From NCBI GenBank assembly GCA_965637545.1, contig OZ281498.1, positions 7,440,001 through 7,504,000 of the forward strand: DNA of 64,000 bases. The letters run 5' to 3'. Below, piece after piece: positions 33,801-57,800 of this stretch. The translations under genes and the position numbers were made by a program. The notes under the pieces were generated by a model. That model made no database searches. It was not told the DNA's origin and saw only the letters and a program-made list of their open reading frames with translations. Positions within the stretch are counted from its first letter, which is position 1. Every line of letters starts with the position of its first letter. The DNA is from Phallusia mammillata. Taxonomy: Eukaryota.

Positions 33801-36800
33801 ATGCGGAAAATTACGTCCCACCCAGAGGATTATTACGGGGTTTTGATGTTTGGGTTCAAACATAAACAAGAGTGGATTTGGCGCAAAAACCGCATCGGAA
33901 GGAAATGATACGGTTTCTTGAGTCAGGTACTGAAGTTCAAAGTTACCCATTCCCGATTTGGGATCGATCCTGCTGGACTTATTACCATTGGCATAAAAAG
34001 TTAATTGAAGTTCAAAATGTGGGCCAGCTTAGTTTAATTTTTGTTCATTTTTATTTTATATTTTGGATTTTGCGAAACTAATTCTTAAGGACTTATAACT
34101 TGTTTTGTAATGCAACATATCTTCAAGACAAAACATTAAAATGTATTCCCGTATAAAAAAGCAATTTTGCACTAACTGAAAACCCCTGAATTTAAAAATT
34201 AGTATAAAAGCAGTACTTTAAACAATAATATAAAAATGTCCGACCAAATTTTCCGCTCAGCACTAACTTACCGATGACAGCCACTTCAATCTTGGAGGTC
34301 ACAATATCATCGCCGACCTTGAGTTGAAGGTCATAGACACCGGAGTCCCAACGTTCAGCTTTGCGGATGAAGAGGACGCTGGAATCAAGGGAGTTTCTTA
34401 CTGCAACGTGCTCCTCCAAAGCTTTGCCTTCCTTCGTCCATGATAACTGAGGCTTGGGGCGACCCTAGAGAAGAGAAGATAGATATGGATACCATTGGAT
34501 GTGCAAAGTATGGCCTACCAACAGGATTCTGGAATAATGTTACTATTCAACAAATGTTCTAGTTGATAACGGGAGACAGATCAAGTCGCGTGGGTTAGAT
34601 GTACTAAGCATAGAAATACAACATGACTCTTATTACTCAACAAAATATTTGAAATAACTGGTAATAACTGTCACTATTCAACAAAGATTTTGGTAATAGA
34701 TGAAATTAATTGAGTGGTTATTCCGAATCAAAGTCGCGTGGGCTATCTATATCGTCCGACGTTTTGCGCCAATCTATATTTTTTCAACAAGTGTTTTGAA
34801 ATCTGGTGTGTTTTGTTTGGAAGTTTATTACCAAGTTTTGTGGTTAAACTGCTAATAAGTCTTAATCTTGGTGCATTTTATAAACACAGCAGTTTTCGTA
34901 CACTCCCTTGCCTCCAATTTGTAAAACCAACTAACTATGCCCAATATTGAAGAATCAGGTGCAGACTAAACAACTAAGAGAGATCAAACAAGGTTTTTGA
35001 GGATAATTCGAGCAAAAGTTTCCCGAATATCAATTGTTTATACAGAGACGGTGTTGCGAAAAGCTGGAGCTTCGTTTTAAAATAACAACAGCCCAAAGCT
35101 TACGTTTTGCTCGAGCGCGTCTGAAAGAAAGGCAATTACTCTTCTTGAGAAATTAACTTAGCACCCTTTTTTCGGCTAAAATAAATGTTTCCCTATGTTG
35201 GAAAGGTTAGAGGACTTTGGAGCCGTAACTTCAAACGGTGTGATCACTAGGCTGTAAACCAATAATTTCGTCAGCCATGGTTGTTTAATTCATGTCCAAT
35301 TTTCTTCAAATAACCCAGCAAGCGTTAACGAGCTACAATTAACATAACTTGAATTGCCGTTATGTCCCTTTTAATAAACATTCCTACACCAAAGTTGGCT
35401 CTCGGTAAAACCTTGTGTTATCACCGCCAAGTACAGGAGCTCTGCTGATAAGATTATAACAGATGCCTATGCTCGGTTGGTTAATTAAAATTGCGGTTTG
35501 TTGCTCTAAATTGCGACTACTGATGATGCTAAGTTTGGTGTTGCTGGCTTAAGGATCGACGTAAGGTCAAGTCTGAGGTGAAGTTTATACTTTTTCGTCG
35601 TGGTTGGCACAGTTGTATTAAGCGGAATTAACATTTTTATGTGTGCCGGTTCGGTGGCAGAATGTTATAAATCGCTTGGCTTGCTTGAGTTTTGTTTAAT
35701 CCAAAGGCGACCGTAGGTTTAAACAGCAAGATGCTGAAACTTCAAATCTAGTCCTTTTTAACACATATTTTCTTATCAAAAGTTTGATAGAAAAATATCA
35801 CATTTTGGGGGCGAAATAACACAGGGTGCACTCGGTAAATGATGTACGTCCAACAAGAGTATTTTTGTGGTTAATTCTAAAATCTTATCAGGAATACTTT
35901 GTTTTTGTTGCAACAGATGTTTTCACAAATTTCAGATTAATTTTGTGGGTAAACAACTGCAAAAAGGAATATGGCTAAGAAATGTAGCAGCTTTCGTCGC
36001 ACCCATATTGATATCATTCGCCAATCAAGACAAAAAAGCAAACCAACAAACCTGATATGGGACATTGACGTGCAATTTGGCGCCGACCTTCACTTTAACC
36101 GGTTTCAGAAGATGACGTGGCAACACAATCTTGGCCTCCTCTGTGAAAAAAACACCCACAGATGTAAATGATTATCACGTACTACCACACCATGATGACG
36201 CATCACCGTGACGTCATGCGTCGAGGCGGCACGCGACATTCGACAACGTCACGCGACATGTCAGACGGCTTGAGGAGTTTTTAAGGCAATTAAGCAGAAT
36301 TTAAGGCGATTTTCTAGTAAATTTGTGTGTGGTGGAAAAGCTTACGTTCACTGCACAGCTGTGTATGTTATAACCACAAACAGATAACCAAGTTCAATTA
36401 AAGATAAGTATGTTGCCTGTTGTAGCTTATATAGGAGGCAATCTTTTGCTGAACCTGTTGAGTATCGTGTGTATTATAAAGCAATAGGTCTCCCTATCTT
36501 TTTTGTTGCTATGAAGTACGGTTTAATAACATTATATTTACATGTGACATTTCAATCATGACTAAATCATTCACTTTTGTTCAGAAACTCCGCCTGGCCA
36601 AAACTGTTGATTGAAAGTTAAAAAAAGTGTTCAGTACAGACAGAAAACCGCTAACATCAAAAGTAGTGGTAAAATACAAAAGCGAAAATCAGGTTTATCT
36701 CCATGTACACCAACCCGACTAGCAGCCAAAAACCAACAAACATACGCCAGGCAAATGCCCGTTCAGCCCCGCAAACGGAATTAACTTATCTTGAGCAAGT

Positions 36801-42800: not shown

Positions 42801-45800
42801 CGTAATCTTATCCATCAGGGAGGCAAGGACCAGTTTTTACTGCCATACATTTGCGTGCTGCAGTGTTTTTCAAACTATAGCGCCTTGGCCTGCTCAAGAC
42901 CAAACACGAAAAAATCGCGCCACCCAGCGATCAAGGTACAACCGCTCTATAGAATACTATATTTAAACTTAAATCAAAAAGGTAACTTCAACTGCTTAAT
43001 TCGACGAATTCAGTTAAATGTCGGAAAATATGAACTTATTGACCAGGGGTATGCAACCTGCGGCCCATTGATTAAAGGTTGTGCGGCCAGCAGAGACGTT
43101 TGGATTTCGAATGTACTGATGGTAAACGAGTCCCAACTATTAAATATTTTTGAGCAGAATAATGCGCTTAGTGCTATTTTTCTGAGACCTGACCATATGC
43201 GGTTAGAATTAAATGCGAATTTTACTTGATAGGCATATATGCAAATATATTTGGTATGCAACAAAGTAAAATCACCTTGTGTTATAAAAGGTGCGGCCAG
43301 CGATCTAATCATGGTAATTGTATTTGGTCCCACAGTGACAGGTATGCACATCCTGTTATTGATGATTTAAGTAATAAAAAATGAGTAGCTTGGCGGCGAT
43401 TCATACATATACATATATGATTATAATAGCGAGTTTCATCAAAATGCTAATGTCAAACCCATCAGTATAAACACAAAAACATAACAACAGAAAAAAAGGG
43501 GGACAAAAGTTACCACGTAACAGCTAAAGACTAAAAATTAAAACACGCAGTATATTTAAGACGCACCTATATTGGCGGGTGTCACTATCCAGATGGGATT
43601 TATATCGATGCAGCGAAATACGCGTGCGAACTGACGGGGTGGTGATTGCTGTCGGAAACAATTTTTCGCCCCCCTCGCGTGTAGTCTAAAGCAAACTGCG
43701 ACAACAAAACACAACTTTGTGTCACTTAACTATAGGCTGAGATACTACCCCAATTGAGTTGGCTAAATCTTGTATTTTTACGCAACAGAAGTCTAAATTA
43801 TCATTACTATGACAAGACTGGTTTGTCGACAAACGCGGTGAATGTAAAAATCCCATATACGGCCCTTAAAACAACAGTTAGGTGGCAAAATTCACTACAC
43901 TTATTCGAGAAGCGTTTAGTGTCTTACAGAGAAGTTTGATCGGTGTTTCGTGACAATTAAATTGGGATTTGTTGACAGTAGAGTTGTAAGTCGTACCGCA
44001 CTTTTCGATTCGAGTTCGGGTTTGGCTCAAAATTGGGCTTTAATTTACTAAACTAGGATTCGATTTGGGGCTGACTGCATTTGTATCGTAGTTTTGTATA
44101 CCATTGGTTTATACAACTTTCTGGCGTAATTTCGGCTTGTTTTTCTTAAAAATATTGGGCTTGTCAAAAATCACTTCCAGATACAGCCACGAACACAATT
44201 CTTTAGCGCCATATAGCGGGATATTTTAAAGTTACAGCCTTTGTTGGTAAAAAACATCTTTGCTGGTTATACCTCGATTCCCAAATTTGTAAAGTTATGA
44301 AAGAGTGTTATTTTGAATTTCGTTTACAATTGTACATTGTAATTGTACCGACACTGACACAAAACACAATAGCATGCGTGCGAGCTATTGTGCGAAAGGA
44401 AAGCGGAGATGCCCTAACAAGTGGCGCCTTGCTTTTCTACTGCCGTCCTCTTCTCTTCATGCATGCGCGGTGCAATTGCCGATGAATACATTTTAATTCA
44501 ATAAGACGTTTAATAACAAAAAGCCGCGTTTATATTGATTGTCTTACGCACAATGTATGTTTTAAAAATCAAAACCTTACTGAAGTTTAGTAGTTCACAT
44601 ACCCAGTGGTGTAAATGGAATACAGGCCTTGCTTGCTTCACCGATTCCGACTTCATTAGCGGCACGAACGCGGATCTGATATTCGGTTCCTTCGATCATA
44701 CGACGAGCCACATATTCGATGAATGGAAGCGGTTCCACATTAAGACGAATCCAACGTTCCGATTTGATCTTTTTGCGCTCAATAATGTAACCTATGCAAA
44801 GTGTGCACATTGTTGGATATTGGGTGGATTTAAAAAAGAGGATAAAACGATTGGTTGACACTTTTATTACAGAAAATGTTAAAGTTCTGTGCAGTGATTT
44901 ATTTCAAGATGAATCGAATTGTTTGGTAGTTTTCTGCCTCACAAAAGATTATGTGATAATTATCAGAAAACATAAAATGTCCTATGAGGAAGGTAAAACA
45001 AAATCGCATTTATGTATTAAAACTTAAAAACGACATTTTAAAAAATCGGTTTAAAACTACATAAACAACCAAACATTTTATCGGGATCGGCCTTTTAAAA
45101 ATTTTCATGCAGCAAAGCCCTACTTCGGAAATACGCCCTATTGAGGCCTACAGTAATTTGATTAAGAAAGCGATTTCTGGGATCTCACAATCATTTTTTG
45201 TAACAAAACACCCTGAATCTCACCTTTAATGGGACATCCCCCATTGCATGCTGGCTCTGTCCAAGCTACGTAACAAGTCTCAGCTGTGACGTCAGAGATC
45301 TTCGGCACGGTTGGAGCAGATGGGACGTCTGTGACGTTGTGATAAAATTATAAACTACTTAAATGGGCATTGTAGGTTTTTAAAAAAATCATGCAGTCAT
45401 GCAACTACAAAAGCAGTGAATGTGAAGTCACGTGAATGCATTGTATAAAAAATCCAGCTCAATACCGCCACCAAACGTCAGAATAAAATGGCAAATGTGT
45501 CAACATTTGCTTCTTTTCGTTATCTAATACAAGCTATAGCTAATGCCGGGGGTTCGAATCCCACAAGCTTGATTATCCGTGTCATAATATGAAAATTCTT
45601 GGAAAACCTGCTTGGTTCGGCTATACGCATTTAAGAGACCTGGTGTACTATGATTTAAATATCATATCAATATACCGTGACCGCTGGCATGAACGATTCA
45701 GGGCTGATAACATTTTGAAATTTAAGTGTATCAATAATCATTGCATTCTACTTAAAACGTCAAAACGCTTGCTATATGCCAGCTCGATTATCAGTTTCGG

Positions 45801-48800
45801 GTAAATTGAAATGCAATTTAAAAAAAAACGTTTGTCTTTCTCGAAAACCACACCACGCGGGAAATCCCCTCACCGAGTACTTGTATTTTAATCTGGATCT
45901 CCTGCCTTTTGATGTACTCGGAATCTGCGCCTTCGGTCTCAGCCTTATCCCAAACCAGATCACAGTAATAATCGTCACTGTCCTCCAATTTCGCTTCAGT
46001 GATCACAAGTGACGTCAAGCCGTGCTCCGCGCTTGTGTTAACCCACATGCGTTTGCCTGTTGCGGGCACAGCCAACTGCTTACCCTCCTGAAGTGATATA
46101 GGTTCGCATTGTTAGGCGTTAACATGCATTACTATCAGCTTCATGCAAGCATAAAACGCAATTGCGGTGTGAAATTTGACCTAGTTAATTGTCTATTATT
46201 TTTAACAGGACCTTTTTTTGGATAGGGCCTAAAGTTTTTGATGACGTCGTTGGGCTATGTCGTCAGTAATTTTTGGTGCCATGCCAATTTTGTTTCTGAA
46301 AGTTGATTAGTGAATTTGATAGTAAAGTAGTAAAGAAATTGATAGTAAAGTATTTCGCATTCTGGCTATCATGATGTCATCAAGCGATTATACCATCTAG
46401 AAACATCACTATGACGTCATGATGAAATCATTATAGCGCCATCTTTTATGACGCCATAAGCATTATTTCTCGGTGTTACTGTTTAATTAAGAAGGCTAAA
46501 TAAAATATGTGCGTAAACAGTGCAGTGACGACATGCGTGTACATATGTGACGTCATTCGTGCCCAGTGACGTCGCACCTATGATTTTCACATTGAAGGTG
46601 GCCGACTCGTAACCTTCGTCGCTGCTCAAGGTCAAAACGTAATCACCCGAGTCAGTTCGTCTCGATTTGCTGATAATCAGTGACGTATACTTGCCACTAG
46701 CGGCGGTATCGCACCGAACACGGTCACGACTTGAACCTTCCTCGATTCGCTAAAGGAGATCCCGTGGTTGCCGAAATAGTAATATACGATAAAGTGTTAC
46801 AGCAGGAAATAGGAATGTATAGCTTCCTGTGGGTAGGAATTTATGAATAATTTAGATTTATGAATTTGAATAGTGCAATGCAAACTGTAGTGTCGTTTCA
46901 GGGGACGTTTTTCTTCCCTGTTTTAAACTAAATTAGCTTTTACAAACAGTTACATACAAAAACGAAAAGAAGCCTAAAACGAGATTTAAAAACAATTACA
47001 TTACGAAAGTTTAAAAAAATGCCTATAACAAGAGTTATATAACTTATGTTGAATGCATTTTCGGAAAGTAACATAAGTCAAACCTTGGGTCCTTTCTTCC
47101 ATTCAGGAACGGGTGCAGGATCACCAGAAATTGGAATATCCAACTTAATTTTGTTTCCAGCCTTCACCACAATAGAACGATCCTTCATTGAGTGGTCCAA
47201 GAAAATCTTTGGTGGAACTGTGGAAAAAAGACCATGCAAGTGTCACAGGATTTTCAGTGAATGTTCACAAAAAATAAAAACAAAATAACGCTGTTGAAGG
47301 CAAAAAAAAAACTTAAACATCGTCAAATATTGAAACAGGAGAAAACAAAATTTGCTCCCAAAACTTTTCTGACAATCCTAATACCAGGGGCAATATAAGC
47401 CTCGCAGGGTCAATAAGTTTATGTAGTTCATTATCACGAAAGTACAACAACCATACATAGTAAACAATATCATGGTAAAATTTAGAAACTAACATACAAC
47501 TGGTATCACAATTTATCCCTTCATAGCTTAAACACGGGGCCATATGACACCTTCAATCATATTGTGTTGAAGCTTGATTCAACGGCATCATTAAATGCCA
47601 CTTACCCTTCTTTCGCTCCACAGTAATATGACCTCCTGTCATCTCCAGTGCAGCAGTGATAGCACATGAAGGATTATCTTCAGCAGCGAACGTGTATTCA
47701 CCTTGATCATTGTCTTGCACTTCATTGATCACCAACTTGCGTGCTTTGCCGGTCTGCAAAAATTGGTGTATTAATTGCAAATTTTTTTGATTGTAAAATA
47801 AAGTAAATTAATGTAGTGATATGAAATTATTTCCCAATCTTTGTTTTGCTTTTTTGCAACATTCTGTTCAATTTTGTTTACATGTTTGCTGCTTTAGTAA
47901 CTTGTTGCGATTTTTACACATAATATAACGATGGCAGCAACAGGTATTATATGTCAAATAACAGCCACAATTACCAAATTTAGTCTGTAACTGAGCAGTC
48001 AACACTAACAACAGCAGACGGCAATTAAGCATTTTAATCTCTACACAAAATTATTTCTTCCATGTGGGTATTCGTCCGGTTTGATCTATTTATTTTTGGC
48101 TTGAGCCGTGGCCCGCAGCTACATTTTTGTAAAATATAATTTTATTTCTTGATTTGTTTCTTAAAACACGGTTATTTTACACAGTAACTTAAGTCAAACT
48201 CAGCCAAATTAAAGAATCCATTACCATTGCGTTAGCATTATTGTAAAAGATTTTCAACTTTCGGCAAAGCAACAAATTGTGCATTTTAGGAAAAAATATC
48301 ACAACATCCGTTCTACCTCAGTGATTTTAACGCGGTCATCACCCTTGAGTGGTTTTCCGTCTTTGAGCCAATTTCCCTTGGTCTCCTCGTTGGAAACTTC
48401 GCAAAAAAATTCAGCGGTATCCTTGAAGTTTACCTTCAAACAAAATGATTTAATTGGTTAGTCTAGTACAGTGGTTCTCAACCTTTTTTCTTTCGTGGCC
48501 CACTTTCATTGCAAAAAAAAATCTGTGCCCAGTAATTTTTTAAGGTTCAGAACAAAAAACAAAACAAAAAAATTCCTTCTCAATTCCTCCCCAAGCCATT
48601 ATTCTTGTAAAATTGAGTGTAGTGACACAAATGAAAGTAAATTCTTAAAAAAAGCTTTCTATTTGGTTGGTCTGTGGCCCAATCAAAATGCTTCTATGGC
48701 CCACTGGTTGAGAACCACTGGTCTAGCAAAACCATGCAACTAGTTAAGACTGCCTCGATTAGGTTACGTGTTAGTTTAAACTGGTTTATACAGTGGTGGT

Positions 48801-54800: not shown

Positions 54801-57800
54801 CACTGGGTATAAGTATACCATATTTATAGGTTTACGAAAACTTACGGAACGTATCCTTTCTTGATTTCAATCTTGTGCTCCTCTACTATCGGCGCTGATA
54901 AAAAAAGTTAGTGGGTTAGACAAGAAACCATGAAAAAAATATGTCATAACTCATAAGCAATGATGTTTTATAATGTAACATTTTTAACCTCACAACCAAA
55001 GACCTCATACAAGCGTGGAGGCAAAATATCATAACAGTTAAACGGTGGCAGATAGTAAGCCATGCTTATGAGTTTGCAAGTGACGTCAAAAAAGGTATGA
55101 CGTAATATCGCAGACGGCAAGAAGTGAACATGTCCATTGTCAGCAAACCGTGTGAGTAGCATTGTGCTTATTATGTCAAAAAACATGAAAAGCATTTCTT
55201 TATTTGTAGCTCCCATAAAAGGGAAAAAGATTTCGCGAAAAACACAGGTTTGAAGAGCAAAGAGCTTAACCCAGTGTGGCTAAGAAACAAGCTCGTCATT
55301 CATAAGTTTCCAGTCTAACTGTTTAAGGGTATTCTTTCATGACTATGTGACGTCATTCTGTCGTGAGGTGACGTAACTTTATAAGTGTTCCTGAAGCCCA
55401 AGCGCAAAGTTGCGTAATGTTAGTTAACGATCGTGACGTCATCGCCGGTGACGTGTCACCTACGTCCGACTTTTACATCGAAGCAGCATTCGCTTTCGCC
55501 CCGCTGTGAGACCGCCTTGATACGGTAAGTGCCGCTGTCAGATTGCTTCGGGTGTCGGAGCTTGAGAAAATGCTCGTTGGTTCGTTCGTTGCGCCACATT
55601 TCGAATCGGTCGCCTTTGCTAAGCTCGTAGAACTTGCCCTTGATCCACTTTACGTTGACAGCGTGCAAGACGTCCGCGGCCGCGACTTTCACGCGAACCG
55701 TCGCCTCGACACCTTCGCGTCACGCAGACTTGTTACGTCACAAACAAGTTGTGTTGTTCAACAGGTGGGTGACGACATGTGATTTTATGAAGGATTTAAA
55801 AGAAAGCTGTTGCTCTCGTAAGTGATGATATTGGTTTGAAAAATGATTGGGACTGCAGCTCGTTTAACATTGCAAGTTTTTGGTACTGCAGCTTTACCAG
55901 AATTTGTTTAAGTACACAGGAAACATTAAAAACGTTTTGCCGCGCGTGTTAGCTGGTAGTTTACATCAAGGGTGTGCAATCTGCAATCCATTAGAAAAAG
56001 TTTGTGCGGTCTGCGGACACTTGGATTTTATAGGTGTTTCCAGGTTAACTATTACAGTGCAATCTTATAGATTCCAAATTCTTTTTCGTTTCTGAGCAGA
56101 TTAATACGCCCGGTGTTATTTTTCTGCAACCTGAATGCAGATAGAAACACTTGCGAATTTTATTGATAATTGTTTACTGGATAGATGGGTGTTAACAACC
56201 AAGCCAACTTATGCAGAATAAAGGTGCGGCCTGATCTCATTGATCCATTTGCCCTAACACCTATGGTTGCACATCCCCAGTTTCCATAAATGGCCAATAA
56301 GATCATCGACAAATTAGTGGTTGCAAAATGTTTGCCTTTTACTACAAATAATCCACATTTTTGGAGCAGGGAATTTTTGGTTCTTAATGGTATAAAAGTT
56401 ATAGGGCATCTGTTTATTGTAGCTAAGTAGAATTTGCCATCATCAATCAAAGACATTTGACATTTCAAACCTCGATGGGTTCGGGCGCAACAACACACGT
56501 CTGGCTTATTTTAAAGTCACGCACAATGCAAAATAGGGAAGTTTTTCTGCGAATTTGTGTTGTCATGAGATTTTGAATTGCCTCGTTAATAACCTGCTTA
56601 CAATCGTTGCCAAAATTTCGGTTTGTCGTAACGTAAATACCTACACACAAATTAACGAGGGAATACCTTACCTTCGGTTGTGGAAACGTTCTCAGGCTTC
56701 TCAACAATTGTTTCGGCACCAGCTGAAACATAAAAATTTTCCACATACAGTCTTGCTTCAGCTCGTAGTATAAGGCCAAGGTTAAACCATCCTTAAACAC
56801 TATAGGCTCAAAAACGGAAAATTTGTTCTTTACTGGAAACCGTTAGAAGCAAATCTTTGTCGATTTGTTTTTCTAAATATGTGTTGCCAGGTTTGCTGAT
56901 TAGAATGCAGACAAAATCGGTCAATTGAGTGGTAATTTTCGTCTACTTGAATTTGCGCTAGATCAAAAAAACCAAAGCTCTTGGCATTTAGTATCAACAT
57001 TTGTTGCAAACAATAGCTGTTGTAATCATCTGTGCAAAATCGGTTTTACAAGTCCGAGTTTCTAAGTTCATCTGACTTTTAACGCAATGTGATACAAGAA
57101 AAAATGTTTTCCTCCCAAAAAAAACATTTCCATGATTCCACGTAACATTTCATAAAGGCCATTCACACAAAAATGAAAGTCAGTTATGGACTTCAAATTT
57201 TCCACAAACTTTTACGACATTCCTAAATCGTGATGTTTTAACATGTATCACAATCGTCCAAAATTAGAAAAACGTTTGTTTTGCGATCAAGTCGTTTGTG
57301 GCGGTGAAGCTGTCAAGCGGGTTTAGGCTTCCCACAAGGTTACCGATATACGATTGACTGTATAAGACTTTGTTGATAGCAAAAGTAATGCATGCAAAAA
57401 CACTACTGCGTGTGAAAGATTACCTGCAGTATTTTCATCCGGCTTTGCTCCATCGGTTGTTTCTTCAGTTGCCTTTTGCGGTTCTAAAACCTTCTCTGGC
57501 TGTTGTTTAGGCTCTTTAGGTTGTTCTAACAATAAAAAGACACTTTTTAAAACTTCCTTTCATATTGTGCATTGAACCAAAGTTTGTTAATATTGTAGGT
57601 TGGACAAAATCGAAATGACCAAGTTTAGACCGATCAAGCCACCTTTCAAACATTTGTTTATGAAAAAAATTATTTACCTTCTGTGAGAACAGTTATTTCA
57701 ACAGACAAAGAAGAAAAAAGGGGAAAAACAATTACAACAGTTAGTATTTATTAAAATGTTTAGACGTTCAACTATGCATTCGGTATGGGGTTAAACCGGT

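What the first reader, a model, noticed from the sequence alone, without database searches (positions are those of the whole stretch)
45874..46749. Mutually exclusive duplicated exons give two versions of MyBP-C Ig domain C5
Seen: exons 18A (172 nt) and 18B (214 nt) both encode the D-G strands of C5 (TSLII...DSGDY versus TSLVI...DSDDYYC) and both run phase 0 to 1. Including both or neither shifts the frame. 18B is 14 aa longer, mostly an acidic insertion after the F strand ([18 protein letters not shown]). Known: vertebrates vary C5 between paralogues, cardiac MYBPC3 having a ~28-aa insertion encoded at the junction after the first half of C5. Inference: the tunicate gene independently diversified the same domain by exon duplication, plausibly giving heart, tail and body-wall isoforms from one gene.
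Basis: partly seen in the sequence, partly recalled or inferred. Interest (0 to 1): 0.75.

Follow-up and report, generated by a model that had tools for sequence, protein, structure and literature searches.

The report
Two alternative exons for MyBP-C C5
A sea-squirt muscle gene (myosin-binding protein C) carries two side-by-side, evolutionarily conserved exons that each encode the second half of the same immunoglobulin domain, so only one can be used per mRNA; public RNA assemblies show the longer one in use, and use of the shorter one is still unproven.

Summary
On the minus strand, exon 18A (46578-46749, 172 nt) and exon 18B (45874-46087, 214 nt) both have AG/GT splice sites and both run phase 0 to 1. 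Each encodes the C'-to-G half of the Ig domain whose first half (exon 17, 47084-47217) matches human cardiac MyBP-C domain C5 (E about 1e-11). Including both exons, or neither, gives stop codons.

Three other genomic sources (L001, L002, L005; other species or old paralogues) keep both exons in the same order, with the same phases and lengths. Their introns do not align with the window's. Non-synonymous change is far below synonymous change in every pair (Fisher p 1e-6 to 1e-23). The motif [11 protein letters not shown], inside the 18B insertion, is identical in all four sources.

RNA contigs from four runs in three studies all join 17-18B-19-20 at high depth. 18A appears only in low-depth contigs that still carry intron sequence. 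So 18B is the form in use in those samples, and splicing of 18A is not shown.

The reading as a mutually exclusive pair is well supported by anatomy and by selection. The idea of heart, tail and body-wall isoforms from one gene is untested. This is a new member of a known kind, comparable to the FGFR IIIb/IIIc exons that encode half an Ig domain. Interest is moderate.

The parts
47084..47217 (-). Exon 17: shared first half (A to C strands) of Ig domain C5. It ends in phase 0.
   Evidence: Sequence read. A three-source profile hits human cardiac MyBP-C C5 (1GXE residues 13-54; 8g4l_bo residues 644-685) at E about 1e-11.
46578..46749 (-). Exon 18A: alternative second half of C5, 172 nt, phase 0 to 1, with a canonical sarcomeric I-set sequence.
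   Evidence: It hits titin I-set domains. It is conserved at 74-75% amino-acid identity in L001, L002 and L005 with intact AG/GT sites. pN is 0.14-0.23 against pS 0.57-0.91. In RNA it is seen only in low-depth contigs that run into intron (46561-46760 and 46574-46794).
46088..46577 (-). Intron between 18A and 18B, 490 nt. It holds no further Ig-like open frame.
   Evidence: It does not align with the corresponding introns of L001 (306 nt), L002 (1559 nt) or L005 (176 nt). At these lengths steric exclusion of the two exons is unlikely.
45874..46087 (-). Exon 18B: alternative second half of C5, 214 nt, phase 0 to 1. It carries the F-strand motif DSDDYYC and 14 extra residues in the FG loop.
   Evidence: It is present in the high-depth spliced contig of all four runs laid, with junctions 47084|46087 and 45874|45328. 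It is exactly 214 nt in L001, L002 and L005, and [11 protein letters not shown] is invariant. pN is 0.07-0.31 against pS 0.83-0.94.
45224..45328 (-). Exon 19: start of the first Fn3 domain (C6). It enters in phase 1 and accepts either 18A or 18B.
   Evidence: Both 18A+19 and 18B+19 read through in frame.
44603..44791 (-). Exon 20: second half of Fn3 domain C6.
   Evidence: One search gives the junction. Its best single-stretch match in the PDB is cardiac MyBP-C residues 806-867 (E 4.7e-14).

Best explanation
The two exons are a tandem pair of mutually exclusive exons in a tunicate MyBP-C gene.

- **Shared first half.** Exon 17 encodes the A-C strands of Ig domain C5.
- **Two alternative second halves.** Either 18A or 18B supplies the C'-G strands and joins exon 19 in frame. 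18A gives a compact, titin-like I-set half. 18B gives a divergent half whose FG hairpin is 14 residues longer, acidic, and contains the invariant [11 protein letters not shown].
- **How exclusivity is enforced (inferred).** Both exons run phase 0 to 1, so double inclusion or double skipping creates premature stops. Such mRNAs would be non-productive and probably removed by nonsense-mediated decay. The choice between the exons is presumably set by splicing factors specific to a tissue or stage.
- **Which steps are shown and which inferred.** Shown: the anatomy, conservation and purifying selection on both exons, and 18B as the exon in the abundant mRNA of the samples examined. Inferred: 18A is spliced in another muscle type or life stage; the two C5 surfaces tune an interaction on the thick filament; the pair arose by an old tandem exon duplication.
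For: - Splice sites, lengths and phases are read directly from the sequence.
- Frame tests in four sources all give stops for A+B and for skipping both.
- RNA contigs from four runs in three studies join 17-18B-19-20 with GT..AG introns. Depth is about 400 in three runs and 35 in the fourth.
- Both exons are kept in L001, L002 and L005 in the same order. Lengths are 172 or 175 nt for 18A and 214 nt for 18B, all with AG/GT sites.
- Between the window and L001 only the exons align; the introns do not.
- pN is far below pS for both exons in every pair. dN/dS for 18A is 0.15 between L001 and L002.
- 18A and 18B are reciprocal best matches within the gene region, and a 25-nt stretch at the E strand is still 72% identical at the DNA level (D2).
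- Domain identity comes from the C5 hit of exon 17 and the residues 806-867 hit of exon 20.
Against: - No 17-18A or 18A-19 junction was seen. In the two runs that cover 18A, the contigs extend 4 to 45 nt into the flanking introns. Their depth is 4.6-6.2, about the same as purely intronic contigs.
- The runs are coded, so their tissue and stage are unknown. Contigs also drop rare variants.
- Similarity between 18A and 18B is weak (35% over 37 residues), so duplication as opposed to another origin is not proven.
- I could not retrieve an annotated full-length protein to see which isoforms public gene models contain.
- The taxa of L001, L002 and L005 are unknown. They could be old paralogues rather than orthologues.
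Confidence: 0.72

Rival explanations
1. 18A is a dead relic of an old exon duplication (a pseudo-exon) that is never spliced, and 18B is simply the constitutive exon.
For: All four RNA assemblies use 18B. 18A is seen only in low-depth unspliced contigs. The 18A donor in the window (gtgcga) is further from consensus than the 18B donor (gtgagg).
Against: 18A keeps an open frame, AG/GT sites and phase in four sources whose synonymous sites are saturated and whose introns do not align. pN is 0.14-0.23 against pS 0.57-0.91, with Fisher p 1e-6 to 1e-15. A neutral relic would no longer be recognisable at this divergence.
Confidence: 0.06
2. 18A is a functional coding exon used in a different transcript architecture. 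One example is an alternative last coding exon giving a truncated C1-C5 protein. Another is regulated unproductive splicing, where 18A inclusion together with 18B triggers decay and lowers the MyBP-C level.
For: The only 18A-containing contigs continue into intron. A+B inclusion gives a stop within three codons of 18B, which is the classic layout of a poison-exon switch.
Against: A poison exon does not need a conserved Ig-like protein sequence, yet selection on 18A is at the amino-acid level. The read-through peptide after the 18A donor is not conserved between the window and L001. The GT donor and the phase that matches exon 19 are conserved in all four sources.
Confidence: 0.12
3. The two exons are not products of a duplication. 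18B was recruited from another Ig gene or evolved independently, so the pair is alternative but not paralogous.
For: 18B matches only generic Ig E-F motifs (the antibody-like DSxDYYC) and no sarcomeric protein, whereas 18A matches titin I-set domains. tblastn of each exon against the whole window does not find the other at E up to 1.
Against: The two exons hold the same position and the same phase. Each is the other's best local alignment score among the gene's open frames. A 25-nt stretch at the E strand is 72% identical at the DNA level. hhalign gives E 2.7e-5.
Confidence: 0.1

Closest known systems
FGFR1-3 exons IIIb/IIIc (vertebrates)
   Same: Two adjacent, mutually exclusive exons each encode the C-terminal half of one Ig domain and change a binding surface, while the N-terminal half is shared (from my own knowledge of the family).
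   Different: FGFR is an extracellular receptor and its exon choice sets ligand specificity. Its tissue specificity (epithelial versus mesenchymal) and its regulators are known. Here the domain is intracellular and sarcomeric, the partner is unknown, and use of one exon is not yet shown.
Dscam1 exon 4 and exon 6 clusters (arthropods)
   Same: Mutually exclusive exons that encode half Ig domains (from my own knowledge).
   Different: Dscam has arrays of 12 to 48 variants selected by competing RNA pairing between docking and selector sites, and they encode N-terminal halves. Here there are only two variants. The only repeat search (window only) showed no docking or selector pairing, and its conservation in the other loci was not examined.
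Cardiac-specific 28-residue insert in C5 of vertebrate MYBPC3
   Same: The same domain of the same protein family is the site of isoform-specific elaboration by a loop insertion. In cryo-EM the cardiac insert is proposed to contact the folded myosin heads (PMC10937550).
   Different: The vertebrate difference is fixed between paralogous genes and lies in the CD loop. The tunicate difference is made by alternative exons within one gene, and the extra residues lie in the FG loop at the opposite end of the domain (loop assignment is my inference from the motif positions).
Mutually exclusive exons of muscle genes (myosin heavy chain, tropomyosin, troponin T)
   Same: Tandem, same-phase exon pairs in sarcomeric genes give muscle-type isoforms from one gene. 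The title and abstract of PMC3912159, seen in the listing but not read, concern such clusters in metazoan Mhc genes.
   Different: In the searches I ran, no paper reports such a pair in a MyBP-C gene. From my own knowledge, the known splicing of vertebrate MYBPC1 affects the N-terminus, the M-motif, C7 and the C-terminus, not C5.

Membership tests
Mutually exclusive exon pair | The two exons are adjacent in tandem between the same flanking exons. | tested here: met
   18A and 18B are separated by one 490-nt intron, between exon 17 and exon 19. The order is the same in L001, L002 and L005.
Mutually exclusive exon pair | Both exons have the same reading phase, and including both or neither breaks the frame. 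| tested here: met
   The lengths are 172 and 214 nt, both phase 0 to 1. A+B and skipping both give stops in all four sources.
Mutually exclusive exon pair | The exons are homologous and encode the same structural segment. | tested here: met
   Both are C'-G halves of an Ig domain. They share 35% identity over 37 residues, with pairwise E 2e-6 and hhalign E 2.7e-5, and are reciprocal best matches in the gene. The similarity is weak.
Mutually exclusive exon pair | Each exon is found spliced to the common flanking exons in mRNA, and never both together. | tested here: inconclusive
   The 17-18B-19 form is seen in four runs from three studies. No contig carries both exons. No 17-18A-19 junction was seen, and 18A appears only unspliced at depth 4.6-6.2. 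The tissue and stage of the runs are unknown.
Mutually exclusive exon pair | Both exons are maintained by selection. | tested here: met
   pN is far below pS for both exons in all pairs of four sources, and the introns do not align.
MyBP-C family | Central and C-terminal domain order: Ig domains followed by Fn3-Fn3-Ig-Fn3-Ig. | tested here: inconclusive
   Open frames on the minus strand read as Ig halves from about 55700 down to 45874, then Fn3 halves at 45328-44603 and 42180-41194, then an Ig-like frame at 36171. Only four exon peptides were scanned against Pfam. The output was cut for the C-terminal part of the gene.
MyBP-C family | Specific sequence similarity to MyBP-C domains rather than to generic Ig or Fn3 domains. 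| tested here: met
   The exon 17 profile hits human cardiac C5 (1GXE) at E 8e-12 and residues 644-685 of the full chain. Exon 20 hits residues 806-867 at E 4.7e-14 as one stretch of 55 bits, against about 20 bits per titin domain.
MyBP-C family | An M-motif between C1 and C2, and binding to myosin. | not tested
   I did not examine the M-motif. Binding cannot be tested with these tools.

The most novel reading that the evidence does not exclude
C5 may be a recurrent tuning point of MyBP-C. Tunicates would then use a conserved exon switch to swap the FG face of C5, where vertebrates fixed a CD-loop insert in the cardiac paralogue. On this reading the extended acidic hairpin of 18B, with its invariant [11 protein letters not shown], is a dedicated contact for folded myosin heads or titin-like proteins in one muscle class, and 18A serves another class. 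That would be convergent evolution of muscle-type-specific thick-filament regulation.
Probability: 0.25. Interest if true: 0.6.

Novelty: new member of a known kind. Interest (0 to 1): 0.42.

Why it matters
The role of the central MyBP-C domains, and of the cardiac C5 insert in particular, is still unclear (PMC10937550). A natural, conserved two-state C5 in a genetically tractable chordate gives a direct handle on it. One could delete or force one exon and then read out larval swimming or heart beat.

It also adds MyBP-C to the sarcomeric genes that make isoforms through mutually exclusive exons in invertebrate chordates, where vertebrates use gene duplicates. For annotation, 18B is the exon of the abundant mRNA here, so a gene model carrying 18A would not represent the abundant mRNA seen in these four runs.

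Tried and rejected
- **Exhaustive protein search.** I ran it with exon 20, hoping to get full-length tunicate MyBP-C proteins. Titin-like multi-Fn3 proteins, ranked by summed score, swamped the list. Only the fragment P0135 was useful, and it led to L002. In hindsight a C5-specific query would have been the better choice.
- **Word search with 18B alone.** It found nothing. A profile of three sequences then found P0153, which led to L005.
- **JGI metagenome scans.** The scan with the 18B profile found nothing. The scan with the 18A profile gave two spurious low-complexity hits, L003 and L004.
- **Rbfox control.** Two UGCAUG motifs lie 41 and 60 nt upstream of 18B in the window, but that placement is not kept in L001 or L002. 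I therefore dropped it as a conserved mechanism.
- **Steric exclusion.** The intron between the exons is 176 to 1559 nt in the four sources, too long for this.
- **U2/U12 incompatibility.** All four splice sites are GT-AG of the ordinary type.
- **Docking/selector RNA pairing.** The window has a few imperfect inverted repeats, mostly built on the frequent TGACGTCA palindrome. I did not test them for conservation, and they show no docking or selector layout.
- **Structure of 18B alone.** The model had pLDDT 57. It is all-beta with a long F-G hairpin, but it is too weak to lean on.
- **Structure of whole C5 variants.** I left this out. A spliced protein (exon 17 plus 18A or 18B) has no reference, and I did not type it.
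- **Which variant is ancestral.** Neither 18A nor 18B matches the second half of vertebrate C5 specifically.

Full report
**Anatomy**

The gene lies on the minus strand. Reading that strand gives these exons:

| Exon | Window coordinates | Length | Splice sites and phase |
|---|---|---|---|
| 17 | 47084-47217 | 134 nt | acceptor cacag\|, donor AAG\|gtttga, ends in phase 0 |
| 18A | 46578-46749 | 172 nt | tttag\|CGAATC ... ATAG\|gtgcga |
| 18B | 45874-46087 | 214 nt | ttcag\|GAGGGT ... CTCG\|gtgagg |
| 19 | 45224-45328 | 105 nt | cacag\|ACGTCC, enters in phase 1 |

Both alternative exons are a whole number of codons plus one base. 17-18A-19 and 17-18B-19 therefore read through. 17-18A-18B-19 and 17-19 run into stops at once. 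No other Ig-like open frame lies in the three introns.

**Which gene and which domain**

A profile of exon 17 from three sources hits the NMR structure of human cardiac MyBP-C domain C5 (1GXE, residues 13-54, E 8e-12). It also hits residues 644-685 of the full-length cardiac chain, as a single stretch. Exon 20 (44603-44791) hits residues 806-867 of that chain at E 4.7e-14, again as one stretch. From memory those residues lie in domain C6.

18A looks like a standard sarcomeric I-set second half; it hits titin domains at E 1e-10 to 1e-12. 18B matches only the generic Ig E-F motif, the antibody-like DSxDYYC. Neither variant matches the second half of vertebrate C5 specifically.

The extra 14 residues of 18B lie between the F-strand motif and the G strand, that is, in the FG loop. 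A structure prediction of 18B alone is all-beta with long F and G strands around a loop at about residues 51-57. Its mean pLDDT is only 57, so I give it little weight.

**Homology of the two exons**

The similarity is weak:
- 35% identity over 37 residues.
- hhalign E 2.7e-5 between four-source... more precisely three-source profiles.
- A 25-nt stretch at the E strand is 72% identical at the DNA level (D2).
- Each exon is the other's best local alignment among all minus-strand open stretches of window 15000-59000. The scores are 55 against 47 for the runner-up of 18A, and 55 against 33 for the best true Ig runner-up of 18B.

An old tandem duplication is the simplest reading, but it is inference.

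**Conservation**

A word search with 18A found a fragment on a JGI metagenome contig, L001. A fragment from the exhaustive search led to a 724-kb ENA contig, L002. A profile search with 18B led to a 32-kb ENA contig, L005.

All three carry 18A, then 18B, then exon 19 on one strand. L002 and L005 also carry exon 17 upstream and exon 20 downstream. Every copy has an AG acceptor and a GT donor. 18A is 172 or 175 nt and 18B is always 214 nt. The frame tests give the same result in each source.

Between the window and L001, blastn aligns only the three exons. The intron between the alternative exons is 490, 306, 1559 and 176 nt in the four sources.

Amino-acid identity to the window is 74-75% for 18A and 55-59% for 18B. 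Synonymous differences are at or near saturation (pS 0.57-0.94), while pN is 0.14-0.23 for 18A and 0.07-0.31 for 18B. Fisher tests give p from 5e-7 to 1e-23. For the least saturated pair, L001 and L002, dN/dS of 18A is 0.15. Within 18B, the eleven residues [11 protein letters not shown] inside the 'insertion' are invariant in all four sources.

Both exons are therefore maintained as protein-coding sequence. I could not name the taxa of L001, L002 and L005. They may be other ascidian species or old paralogues. Either way they are independent lineages.

**Expression**

I laid four runs from three studies on 44600-47300. All are contig sets.

- In each run, one long contig of 2.2 to 3.6 kb joins 47084|46087, 45874|45328 and 45224|44791. 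The skipped parts have GT..AG ends on the transcribed strand. This is 17-18B-19-20.
- Mean word depth is about 390-410 in three runs and 35 in the fourth.
- One run has three differences from the window inside 18B. By my own codon arithmetic from the positions, all three are synonymous third-position changes.
- 18A is covered in two runs only, by short contigs at 46561-46760 and 46574-46794. These contigs run 4 to 45 nt into the flanking introns. Their depth is 4.6-6.2, about the same as purely intronic contigs in one of those runs.
- An in-frame TAG lies directly upstream of the 18A acceptor, so these contigs are unspliced RNA or DNA, not an extended exon.
- The shares of sampled words reported for ten further or identical runs fit 'four exons only', about 0.20-0.21. 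In one study they fit 'four exons plus about one more exon's worth', 0.26-0.27. That is no more than a hint.

The conclusion is that 18B is the exon of the abundant mRNA in these samples. Productive use of 18A is not shown. Contigs drop rare forms, and the tissue and stage of the coded runs are unknown.

**Mechanism**

The intron between the exons is too long for steric exclusion. All sites are ordinary GT-AG. The inverted-repeat search of the window showed no docking or selector layout, and I did not test conservation of those repeats in the other loci. What is conserved is the frame rule: only single inclusion is productive. Decay of the other forms is inferred.

In the window, two UGCAUG motifs lie 41 and 60 nt upstream of 18B. 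That placement is not shared by L001 or L002.

**Comparison with the known**

- Mutually exclusive exons that encode half of an Ig domain are well known in FGFR (IIIb/IIIc) and Dscam. This comes from my own knowledge.
- Mutually exclusive exons are common in sarcomeric genes.
- The cardiac paralogue of vertebrate MyBP-C has a 28-residue insert in the CD loop of C5, proposed to contact folded myosin heads (PMC10937550).
- My three literature searches found no paper on alternative C5 exons in any MyBP-C, nor on tunicate MyBP-C splicing.
- One paper reports a heart-specific Ciona homologue of Mybpc3, KY.Chr1.628 (PMC8462739). Its qPCR primers are absent from the window at up to two mismatches, and from all fetched loci as exact matches. 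This may mean a second MyBP-C gene. It could also be a species difference, or primers that span exon junctions.

**Verdict**

The mutually exclusive reading is well supported by anatomy and selection, but it lacks the 18A junction. The tissue story is untested. The presumed 'standard' and 'variant' roles are reversed relative to what the RNA shows.

This is a new member of a known kind, of moderate interest.

Noticed in passing
window, whole; cluster at 46242-46567: The palindrome TGACGTCA (a CRE-like site) occurs 19 times in 64 kb, where I expect about one from simple 8-mer arithmetic. Fifteen of the 19 lie inside the MyBP-C gene span. Half-sites cluster in the intron between 18A and 18B and at 55001-55500. 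These could be muscle enhancer sites; that link is my recollection of Ciona muscle cis-regulation and was not tested.
   Followed up: partly
window 46123-46128 and 46142-46147 (minus strand): Two UGCAUG (Rbfox-type) motifs lie 41 and 60 nt upstream of the 18B acceptor. That placement is not conserved in L001 or L002.
   Followed up: partly
window 45509-45521 and 46961-46973: A perfect 13-nt inverted repeat brackets both alternative exons, one arm in intron 18B-19 and the other in intron 17-18A. Pairing would loop out both exons. Conservation was not tested, and it may be chance or the ends of a transposon.
   Followed up: no
L001 about 1350-1440: There is a tRNA-like stretch with an internal duplication in the intron between 18B and exon 19 of the related contig. 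It looks like a tRNA-derived SINE.
   Followed up: no
window 45923, 45953, 45956: One RNA run (X2) differs from the window at three positions in 18B. By my own codon arithmetic all three are synonymous third-position changes, which fits polymorphism under purifying selection.
   Followed up: partly
window, whole (primer search): The qPCR primers published for the heart-specific Ciona Mybpc3 homologue KY.Chr1.628 (PMC8462739, supplement) do not occur in this window. A second MyBP-C-like gene may exist in this genome.
   Followed up: partly
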